From Antechinus flavipes (Eukaryota), in NCBI RefSeq assembly GCF_016432865.1, contig NC_067400.1, forward strand, positions 480,004,001 to 480,068,000: a stretch of 64,000 bases of DNA, written 5' to 3'. Numbering within the stretch: the first letter of the stretch is position 1; every line of letters starts with the position of its first letter. The translations under genes were made by a program, and so were the position numbers. Shown here in pieces: positions 56,481 through 57,923 of the stretch. The notes below the pieces were generated by a model. The model saw only the letters and a program-made list of their open reading frames with translations. It ran no database searches and was not told the DNA's origin.

Positions 56481-56715
56481 GTTTTCTAAGTAAGAGATCC
56501 ATTTTTCAGCTAAGAAGGTTAGAAATATGAGCAAGTTTAGAATGTCCTCTCTGGGGAGTAAAATAGTCATATAGAGAGGTACACGAAACTATTTAAAATG
56601 TGTAAGTTGCAAAGAGGAAATAAAAAGGAATTATTAGAATCTCCTGTACATTTTATGCATTTGCAAAACTGGGAATTTAAAGAAATTAATTCCTTTCTCC
56701 ACATATAGTATAACC

Positions 56716-57507
56716 ATGGCTCGTGGTCCCAAGAAGCATCTGAAGCGTGTAGCAGCTCCAAAGCACTGGATGCTGGATAAGTTAACAGGAGTTTTTGCTC
56801 CAAGACCATCCACAGGTCCCCACAAGCTGAGAGAGTGTCTCCCACTCATCATCTTCCTGAGGAACAGACTCAAGTATGCCCTGACTGGAGATGAAGTAAA
56901 GAAGATCTGCATGCAGCGTTTCATCAAGATTGATGGCAAGGTCCGCACTGATATTACATACCCTGCTGGCTTCATGGATGTCATTAGCATTGAGAAGACG
57001 GGTGAACATTTCCGTCTGGTTTATGATACAAAGGGACGCTTTGCTGTTCACCGTATCACTGCTGAGGAGGCTAAATATAAATTATGCAAAGTGAGAAAAA
57101 TCTTTGTGGGTACAAAAGGTATTCCTCATCTGGTAACCCATGATGCCCGTACTATCCGTTATCCAGATCCTCTCATTAAAGTGAATGATACAGTTCAGAT
57201 TGATTTAGAAGCAGGCAAGATCACTGATTTCATCAAGTTTGATACTGGTAACCTATGTATGGTGACCGGTGGGGCCAACTTGGGTCGAATTGGTGTGATC
57301 ACAAATAGGGAGAAGCATCCTGGCTCTTTTGATGTTGTCCATGTAAAAGATGCCAATGGCAATAGTTTTGCCACTAGGCTCTCAAACATTTTTGTTATTG
57401 GCAAAGGTAATAAGCCTTGGATCTCTCTTCCCCGAGGAAAGGGTATCCGCCTTACAATTGCTGAAGAGAGAGACAAGAGATTGGCAGCTAAGCAGAGCAG
57501 TGGCTAA
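56716..57507 (+). CDS. RPS4: 40S ribosomal protein S4 (eS4), intact intronless retrogene, 263 aa
   Basis: Full [12 protein letters not shown]...RLAAKQSSG* with no introns, stops or frameshifts. A TOP-like CCTTTCTCC sits at 56692 just upstream. A degenerate A-rich tail (about 57589-57606) and an imperfect direct repeat (aagaaattaat 56680 / aagaaataagt 57607) flank it. Confidence 0.96.
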
Positions 57508-57923
57508 ATGATTGCAGATAAGAATATGTAGGGTTTCATTCAAATTGAGATGTTACAATACCATTTGTAACCAAAAATGTGATTACCCTATAAAAATATA
57601 CCAAATAAGAAATAAGTAGCTTAAATTACTCAGTCTTATAAAGTGAAATTGAGTAAGCCATAAATGCCTTTCTCTACTTTTCCTTGGATGAGGGTACTGT
57701 GACTATAAATGTTGCATAAAATGTTAGAACATGTACTATGACTATAAATGTTAAAACATAGAGCTGTGTTGGTTTTACTTAACTGCTTTTCTTACTTGGG
57801 AAGACTCACTGGAGGATGGGGAGAGGACATCTCAAAATGGCTGATGTAAAATCAAAAATCAATAAAACTTAAAGAAAAAATTTTGGATTGTTTTATATAT
57901 AAGCATCTGCTAAGATGAATTTT

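What the first reader, a model, noticed from the sequence alone, without database searches (positions are those of the whole stretch)
56692..57617. Old but intact autosomal RPS4 retrogene with a signature of purifying selection
The insertion hallmarks are eroded: no clean poly(A), an imperfect TSD and a CpG-free leader. Yet the 263-aa frame is perfect. I count 14 CpGs in the CDS, and 12 lie inside Arg CGN codons, as expected if silent CpGs decayed while coding ones were retained. RPS4 is X-linked in therians with Y homologs in some lineages. Functional autosomal retrocopies can compensate for meiotic sex chromosome inactivation or Y-gene loss. I recall published reports of autosomal RPS4 retrogenes in marsupials, so this locus may be already described. 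Its position beside testis-expressed DDX25 and ciliary HYLS1 fits a germline role, with possible specialised ribosomes.
Basis: partly seen in the sequence, partly recalled or inferred. Interest (0 to 1): 0.75.

Follow-up and report, generated by a model that had tools for sequence, protein, structure and literature searches.

The report
Known ancient marsupial RPS4 retrogene
This is a working, very old intronless copy of the ribosomal protein gene RPS4 in a dasyurid marsupial; it is kept unchanged by selection across marsupials and was already described in opossum and wallaby in 2015, so it is real but not new.

Summary
An intact 263-aa eS4/RPS4 frame lies at 56716-57507 (+). It has 14 CpGs, 12 of them in Arg CGN codons, and no poly(A). 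The proposed target-site duplication (TSD) is at chance level.

The same locus, with alignable flanks, is present in Tasmanian devil, fat-tailed dunnart and koala. All 48 or more coding changes among the four are synonymous: dN = 0 and dS = 0.07-0.18 from the window, against a neutral flank K of 0.08-0.24. The identical protein is also encoded in opossum, tammar (twice) and four other marsupial assemblies.

Hughes et al. 2015 (PMC4446799) already reported two such retrogenes in opossum and wallaby. They gave an age above 88 My, dN/dS of 0.005-0.013 and broad expression, not testis-biased. The age and selection claims are therefore supported and already known. The germline or specialised-ribosome idea is not supported.

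One addition comes from two young daughter retrocopies in Dromiciops. They preserve the spliced mRNA of this locus. Transcription starts at a TOP-like site in a CpG island 2.4 kb upstream, probably shared with HYLS1. Two non-coding exons follow, one from a dispersed repeat, and the mRNA ends at the AATAAA at 57861. This agrees with scan note s1-192095 on the same window.

The parts
53940..54460 (.). CpG island, the inferred promoter of the retrogene. It is probably bidirectional with HYLS1, whose coding exon lies 16.5 kb away on the minus strand.
   Evidence: CpG o/e is 0.74 and GC 0.58, with 33 CpGs, against a window-wide o/e of 0.18. Divergence from devil is K 0.06 against 0.08-0.10 in neutral flanks. 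An E-box CACGTG (54228-54233) and the start site are identical in window, devil, dunnart and koala. The link to HYLS1 is an inference from gene order and was not tested with RNA.
54236..54276 (+). Non-coding exon 1 (41 nt). It starts at a TOP-like CTCTT and is followed by the donor GTGAGT at 54277.
   Evidence: Both Dromiciops daughter retrocopies (L007, L008) begin, straight after their TSDs plus one extra G, with this sequence: 33 of 34 identical, E about 1e-11. They then jump to exon 2. The donor GTGAGT is conserved in devil, dunnart and koala.
54518..54597 (+). Non-coding exon 2 (about 80 nt), derived from a dispersed repeat (MIR-like). The acceptor is TTTTGTAG. The 3' end is uncertain: GT at 54598, or the conserved GTAAGT at 54626.
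   Evidence: The Dromiciops cDNA fossils match 54513-54593 at 80-81% identity, E 1e-16 to 1e-18, directly joined to exon 1 and to the leader of the coding exon. The core of the exon has 10 copies in the window against 0 expected. There is no ATG in exon 1 or in either version of exon 2.
56709..57880 (+). Terminal exon: short leader, CDS and 3' UTR. The acceptor AG is at 56707-56708 in this species. The upstream AG used or available in devil, dunnart and koala (CAG) reads CAC here (56700-56702).
   Evidence: Homology to the Dromiciops daughters runs 56711-57879 only. The polypyrimidine tract and AGs are conserved.
56716..57507 (+). Intronless coding sequence of eS4/RPS4, 263 aa, with Kozak context ACCATGG.
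   Evidence: Pfam families RS4NT, Ribosomal_S4e and 40S_S4_C hit the product. The identical protein is found in at least 9 other marsupial assemblies. dN is 0 among the four orthologs.
57508..57880 (+). 3' UTR of about 370 nt, ending after the AATAAA at 57861-57866.
   Evidence: It is conserved above the neutral level: K 0.039 against 0.08-0.10 for devil, and 0.137 against 0.22 or more for koala. The poly(A) tails of both Dromiciops daughters start just after the homologous AATAAAACTT.
57570..57580 (+). Short A-rich tract of variable length, a possible remnant of the original retrocopy poly(A).
   Evidence: It is A5 here and in devil, A11 in koala and A7 in the Dromiciops copies, about 65-70 nt after the stop. 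This is inference only, because the parental 3' UTR was not available.
36776..37744 (-). HYLS1 coding exon (context only).
   Evidence: The ORF was found. Pfam HYLS1_C gives E 2.5e-40.

Best explanation
The locus is the dasyurid ortholog of one of the two ancient autosomal RPS4 (eS4) retrogenes of marsupials. A processed RPS4X/Y mRNA inserted next to the 5' end of the HYLS1-PUS3-DDX25 block before the Australian orders and Dromiciops split, and before the opossum split according to the literature. The copy became a full gene. Transcription starts at a TOP-like C (54236) in a CpG island 2.4 kb upstream, probably the bidirectional HYLS1 promoter. The transcript runs through two recruited non-coding exons, the second from a dispersed SINE-like repeat. 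It is spliced onto the old retrocopy just before its ATG and is polyadenylated at a downstream AATAAA (57861). It encodes a canonical eS4 that is identical across marsupials and serves as a broadly expressed housekeeping source of eS4. Hughes et al. proposed that this keeps up RPS4 dosage after loss of RPS4Y; in tammar, RPS4X is itself broken. Shown here: the intact frame, the shared position in four species, dN = 0, the spliced mRNA structure in Dromiciops, and germline expression, since daughter retrocopies exist. Taken from the literature: expression breadth and presence in opossum and wallaby. Inferred: sharing of the promoter with HYLS1, the exact splice sites in this species, and the dosage role.
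For: The frame is intact and the protein is canonical. Flanks align to devil (89% over 6.5 kb), dunnart and koala (69-77%), so this is the same locus. There are 47 variable CDS sites and at least 48 changes, all synonymous. From the window, dS is 0.075, 0.069 and 0.180, against neutral K of 0.08-0.10, 0.10-0.15 and 0.22-0.24. With about three quarters of sites non-synonymous, neutrality would give about 130 replacement changes between window and koala; none is seen. The exact protein is also present in opossum, tammar (two contigs) and four more marsupial assemblies. As a control, the two Dromiciops daughter copies differ by 7 CDS changes, 5 of them replacements (dN/dS 0.74), including two CGN CpG losses. 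For the mRNA structure, the daughters carry TSDs, poly(A) tails and a 138-nt leader made of window 54236-54276 plus about 54518-54597 plus the pre-ATG leader. The CpG island is documented. Published work gives two retrogenes, syntenic between opossum and wallaby, older than 88 My, dN/dS 0.0132 and 0.0053, broad expression, and a disrupted wallaby RPS4X.
Against: Expression and splice sites here therefore rest on another species' cDNA fossils and on conservation. No opossum or tammar DNA could be fetched, so which published retrogene this is, (1) or (2), is not settled. The 124-nt 5' UTR of the opossum (2) model fits the spliced leader, but that is only suggestive. The first acceptor AG is mutated in this species, and the devil lacks GT at the exon 2 donor used in Dromiciops, so the splice pattern may differ in detail. 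Gene conversion among RPS4 copies was not excluded. HYLS1 exon 1 in the island was not shown.
Confidence: 0.85

Rival explanations
1. It is a germline-specialised paralog. The retrogene would exist mainly to supply eS4 in spermatogenic cells while the X-linked parent is silenced, or to build testis-specific ribosomes.
For: The parent is X-linked, and out-of-X retrogenes often compensate meiotic silencing (Carelli et al.). Rodent and bovine RPS4 retrogenes are testis-specific or testis-predominant. The gene must be transcribed in the germline, since it spawned daughter retrocopies in Dromiciops.
Against: Published RPKM values for both marsupial retrogenes are broad. In opossum males testis is low for Rps4a2 (5.2, the second-lowest male tissue) and middling for Rps4a1 (10.6), and testis is unremarkable in wallaby. 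A CpG-island promoter with a TOP-like start fits housekeeping use. The protein shows no specialisation and is invariant across marsupials.
Confidence: 0.07
2. It is a non-functional processed pseudogene. Its frame would be kept intact by repeated gene conversion from RPS4X or from the other retrogene, not by selection on this copy.
For: Two tammar loci encode the same protein. dS is somewhat below the flank rate, for example 0.069 against 0.10-0.15 for dunnart. Katsura and Satta inferred conversion among opossum RPS4 copies.
Against: Synonymous differences grow with species distance, as expected for orthologs. Leader exons, splice sites, promoter and 3' UTR lie outside any parental homology and are conserved above neutral. 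The locus makes a mature spliced mRNA. Published expression and dN/dS agree.
Confidence: 0.03
3. This is a rival on mechanism only. In this species the gene would be transcribed from a proximal promoter just upstream of the old retrocopy (conserved 56600-56700, with a TTTAAAG box about 20 nt before the pyrimidine tract) rather than from the distant CpG island.
For: The 116 nt upstream of the ATG are conserved above neutral (K 0.045 for devil, 0.149 for koala). The first acceptor AG is lost here. The pyrimidine tract CCTTTCTCC could act as a TOP start.
Against: Both independent Dromiciops cDNA fossils are the spliced form starting in the CpG island. The proximal region is CpG-poor. A second AG six bases downstream remains. 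The conserved tract is equally well explained as branch point plus polypyrimidine tract.
Confidence: 0.12

Closest known systems
Marsupial autosomal RPS4 retrogenes (opossum chr4 copies 1 and 2 and their wallaby orthologs; Hughes et al. 2015, Genome Biol 16:104, PMC4446799)
   Same: Both are intronless 263-aa RPS4 copies that are syntenic across marsupial orders, with dN/dS near zero. The exact protein of this window is encoded in opossum and twice in tammar.
   Different: This is a dasyurid ortholog that the paper did not examine. Which of the two copies it is was not settled. The leader exons, the promoter and the Dromiciops daughter copies are not in the paper's text as read here.
Rodent Rps4l and bovine chr23 RPS4 retrogenes (same paper)
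   Same: They are independent X/Y-to-autosome retrocopies of the same gene, intact and under purifying selection.
   Different: Those are testis-specific or testis-predominant and of independent origin. The marsupial copies are broadly expressed.
Retrocopies that recruit a bidirectional or CpG-island promoter through new 5' exons (Carelli et al. 2016, PMC4772013; Fablet et al. 2009 as cited there)
   Same: The retrocopy sits head-to-head with an upstream gene's CpG island. New non-coding exons and introns bridge the gap, and expression is broad.
   Different: Here the distance is 2.4 kb with two exons, one repeat-derived, and the new start is TOP-like, as suits a ribosomal protein mRNA. The structure is inferred from cDNA fossils, not from CAGE.
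Primate RPS4Y1/RPS4Y2
   Same: They are extra RPS4 copies retained alongside RPS4X for dosage or male function.
   Different: Those are Y-linked, contain introns and are diverged in protein. This copy is autosomal-type, intronless and invariant in protein.

Membership tests
eS4 / RPS4 ribosomal protein | Full-length similarity to solved eS4 and the family's Pfam domains (RS4NT, Ribosomal_S4e, KOW, 40S_S4_C) | tested here: met
   The protein is identical at 260 of 263 residues to chain 8q7z_Ad, E 9.5e-179, aligned 1-263. The Pfam families are listed for the product.
Processed (L1-type) retrogene | Coding sequence uninterrupted where the parental gene has introns | tested here: met
   There is a single 792-nt ORF. 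That the parent has introns comes from the literature and was not checked here.
Processed (L1-type) retrogene | Poly(A) tail and target-site duplication at the insertion | tested here: not met
   Only a short variable A-run is present. The best direct repeats are at chance level, reached by 206 of 300 and 52 of 300 shuffles. This is expected for an insertion older than 60 My. The young Dromiciops daughters do show both features.
Marsupial RPS4 retrogenes of Hughes et al. 2015 | Same genomic position in distant marsupials | tested here: inconclusive
   The feature is met for devil, dunnart and koala. The Dromiciops daughters carry this locus's leader exons. Opossum and tammar encode the exact protein, but their DNA could not be fetched, so the link to the published loci is by inference.
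Marsupial RPS4 retrogenes of Hughes et al. 2015 | dN/dS far below 1 between orthologs | tested here: met
   dN is 0 and dS from the window is 0.07-0.18 (up to 0.25 between other ortholog pairs). There are at least 48 synonymous and 0 replacement changes.
Marsupial RPS4 retrogenes of Hughes et al. 2015 | Transcribed, broadly | not testable with these tools
Indirect evidence comes from the spliced, polyadenylated cDNA fossils in Dromiciops and from published RPKM tables.
Testis-specialised out-of-X retrogene | Testis-biased expression | not tested
   There is no RNA for this species. Published opossum and wallaby data show no testis bias.
Retrocopy driven by a neighbour's bidirectional promoter | Head-to-head with an upstream gene's start site in one CpG island | tested here: inconclusive
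   The retrogene's start in the island is supported. HYLS1 exon 1 in the same island is inferred from gene order only.

The most novel reading that the evidence does not exclude
In dasyurids this HYLS1-linked retrogene, alone or with its sister copy, may have become the main or only source of eS4. The X-linked parent would be decayed, as reported for tammar. That would be a full relocation of an essential ribosomal protein gene off the X. The regulatory features of ribosomal protein genes (TOP-like start, CpG-island promoter) would have been rebuilt from a neighbour's promoter and a SINE-derived exon.
Probability: 0.2. Interest if true: 0.5.

Novelty: already known. Interest (0 to 1): 0.28.

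Why it matters
The finding confirms, in a third marsupial order and with newer assemblies, that an RPS4 retrogene has been held without a single amino-acid change for tens of millions of years. This fits the published idea that autosomal copies back up dosage-sensitive X/Y genes after Y loss. The added value is modest. It gives a concrete picture of how the stripped-down copy became a proper gene: a borrowed CpG-island promoter, two recruited leader exons and a new poly(A) site. It also shows that young daughter retrocopies can serve as a record of a gene's mature mRNA when RNA data cannot be used. In addition, two Dromiciops gene models ('S4-like' and 'S4, Y-like') look like recent, neutrally evolving retrocopies and not functional genes or Y homologs.

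Tried and rejected
After that, no letters of the coding exon were sent to any search tool. Only local scripts, the leader exons, HYLS1 and PUS3 were used.

2. Divergence from the parental RPS4X: no marsupial RPS4X sequence could be obtained. The protein database is clustered at 90% identity and all eS4 fall in one cluster. The costly protein search was not used, as advised.

3. Opossum, tammar, possum, wombat and Gracilinanus loci have no DNA available ('file too large'), and no neighbouring genes are listed even with 10-kb flanks.

4. The synteny figure in the Hughes supplement is held as images only.

5. Species identification through an exact HYLS1 protein look-up found nothing on record. 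The species is a dasyurid closer to devil than to dunnart, otherwise unnamed.

6. The TSD search gave chance-level results.

7. A paper search for RPS4 together with HYLS1 found nothing relevant.

8. The idea that the copy is young was rejected, because it shares its position with koala. The idea that an intact frame alone proves function was rejected, because the Dromiciops daughters are intact yet evolve neutrally.

Exons were compared one by one, by reference.

Full report
What is there. The window holds a single uninterrupted ORF at 56716-57507 (+) of 263 codons. Its product aligns end to end with solved eS4 chains and is identical at 260 of 263 residues to chain 8q7z_Ad. The Pfam families RS4NT, Ribosomal_S4e and 40S_S4_C are on record for it. 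No poly(A) follows the stop. The suggested target-site duplication (TSD) is no better than chance.

Surroundings. On the minus strand, DEAD-box exons of the DDX19/25 type run from about 24 kb to about 7 kb. The HYLS1 coding exon is at 36776-37744 on the minus strand (Pfam HYLS1_C). A TruA-type pseudouridine synthase, PUS3 by position, starts at 39738 on the plus strand. A CpG island lies at 53940-54460, with o/e 0.74 against 0.18 for the window, 2.3-2.8 kb upstream of the RPS4 ORF. From the gene order, and from the human arrangement as I recall it, this island is the likely 5' end of HYLS1. That is an inference and was not tested.

Age and selection. An exact look-up found the same 263-aa protein on 13 chromosome-scale contigs. 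DNA was available for three of them. The assemblies are Tasmanian devil, koala and fat-tailed dunnart according to papers that cite those accessions. Tammar (two contigs) and opossum are also among the holders. The flanks of the devil, dunnart and koala loci align to the window over many kilobases: 89% for devil, 73-88% for dunnart and 69-77% for koala. These are therefore orthologous insertions, and the copy predates the dasyurid-diprotodont split.

Among the four orthologs, 47 coding sites vary, needing at least 48 changes, and every one is synonymous. By the NG86 method dN is 0, and dS is 0.075 (devil), 0.069 (dunnart) and 0.180 (koala). K2P in the intron and downstream flank is 0.08-0.10, 0.10-0.15 and 0.22-0.24. 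Silent sites thus evolve at roughly the neutral rate while replacement sites do not change at all. The 12 CGN CpGs are invariant in all four species, whereas silent CpGs come and go.

A natural control. Two Dromiciops proteins from the same cluster are annotated 'S4-like' and 'S4, Y-like'. They lie on different chromosomes and share no flank with the window. Each has a clear TSD and a poly(A) tail. They differ from each other at 11 of 1268 positions. In the CDS, 5 of 7 differences are replacements (dN/dS 0.74), and two of these are CpG transitions in CGN codons, R148H and R245C. This is how an unconstrained RPS4 retrocopy behaves. It shows that the invariance at the window's locus is due to selection. 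It also shows that an intact frame, or a high share of CGN CpGs, is not proof on its own, since L008 still has 12 CGN CpGs.

How the gene is expressed. The two daughters are copies of a spliced mRNA of this very locus. After the TSD and one extra G, both begin with a sequence that matches window 54236-54269 (33 of 34 identical). They continue with a match to about 54513-54593 and then run into the few bases before the ATG. In the window these blocks are separated by 241 nt and by about 2.1 kb. They are bounded by GTGAGT (54277), the acceptor TTTTGTAG (ending 54517) and a polypyrimidine tract with AG before the ATG. The exon 1 donor and the start-site context, including an adjacent E-box, are conserved in devil, dunnart and koala.

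The mature mRNA therefore starts at a C followed by four pyrimidines (a TOP-like start) in the CpG island. It carries two recruited non-coding exons without any ATG. It ends shortly after the AATAAA at 57861-57866, where both daughters' poly(A) tails begin. The 3' UTR up to that point is conserved above neutral. The core of exon 2 belongs to a dispersed repeat with 10 copies in the window against none expected. From memory it resembles the MIR core. A variable A-run about 65-70 nt after the stop may be what is left of the original poly(A). This would mean the gene now reads through to a downstream signal, but that point is only an inference.

Two details may differ in this species. The first acceptor AG reads AC here, leaving an AG six bases downstream. 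The exon 2 donor used in Dromiciops is weak here and absent in devil, while a strong GTAAGT 28 nt further on is conserved. Its further claim, that the old 5' TOP became the acceptor, could not be tested without the parental UTR.

What could not be done. The parental RPS4X of a marsupial was not obtainable, so dS to the parent is not given.

Comparison with what is known. Hughes et al. 2015 (PMC4446799) report two intact RPS4 retrogenes on opossum chromosome 4. Both are syntenic in wallaby, older than 88 My, with dN/dS 0.0132 and 0.0053, and wallaby RPS4X is disrupted. Their tables show broad expression. In opossum, Rps4x dominates and both retrogenes are lower, and testis is at the low end for Rps4a2 (5.2) and mid-range for Rps4a1 (10.6). 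In wallaby, Rps4a2 dominates in all tissues. An older paper treated one opossum copy as 'RPS4Y', which explains the 'Y-like' label in Dromiciops. Recruitment of bidirectional or CpG-island promoters through new 5' exons is a documented route for retrocopies (Carelli et al. 2016).

The window's gene is almost certainly the ortholog of one of the two published loci. The 124-nt 5' UTR of the opossum (2) model fits the 128-138-nt spliced leader, which favours copy (2). Without opossum DNA this stays open.

Verdict. The reading 'old, intact, selected, probably already described' is right. The reading 'germline role, specialised ribosomes, meaningful DDX25 neighbourhood' is not supported. The thing is already known. 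The promoter and leader-exon structure and the Dromiciops daughter copies are small additions of a known kind.

Noticed in passing
L007:9850-11150 and L008:9850-11150 (Dromiciops gliroides, GCA_019393635.1): Two young full-length retrocopies of the spliced mRNA of this locus. They have TSDs (about AATGATTCATAGA and AAATAAATAGCT), poly(A) tails and an extra 5' G. They are annotated as protein-coding 'S4-like' and 'S4, Y-like' but evolve neutrally (dN/dS 0.74). L007 sits antisense in an intron of an alpha/beta-hydrolase gene.
   Followed up: yes
window 56700-56702: The first acceptor AG before the ATG (CAG in devil, dunnart and koala) reads CAC in this species. A second AG at 56707-56708 remains. 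The leader would be 6 nt shorter if that one is used.
   Followed up: partly
window 54228-54243: An E-box CACGTG lies directly upstream of the inferred TOP-like start CTCTTGCC. The stretch is identical in window, devil, dunnart and koala.
   Followed up: partly
window 53918-53950: Conserved splice-donor-like motifs occur on both strands at the far edge of the CpG island: GGTGAGA on the minus strand and GTAAGT on the plus strand. The minus-strand one could be the end of HYLS1 exon 1. There is no RNA evidence.
   Followed up: no
window 1321-1932 (-): A 203-aa ORF that looks, from memory, like the C-terminal part of a LINE-1 ORF2 protein. It has no Pfam hit at E 0.001.
   Followed up: partly
window 4895-49516 (nine sites): Nine further copies of the repeat core that forms leader exon 2, on both strands. 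This is a MIR-like SINE family by recollection.
   Followed up: partly
window 36776-40145: The HYLS1 coding exon lies upstream of the first coding exon of PUS3 on the opposite strand. HYLS1 therefore appears to span PUS3, as I recall for human. Another scan note (s1-192153) concerns a PUS3 alternative exon at 39085-39740.
   Followed up: no
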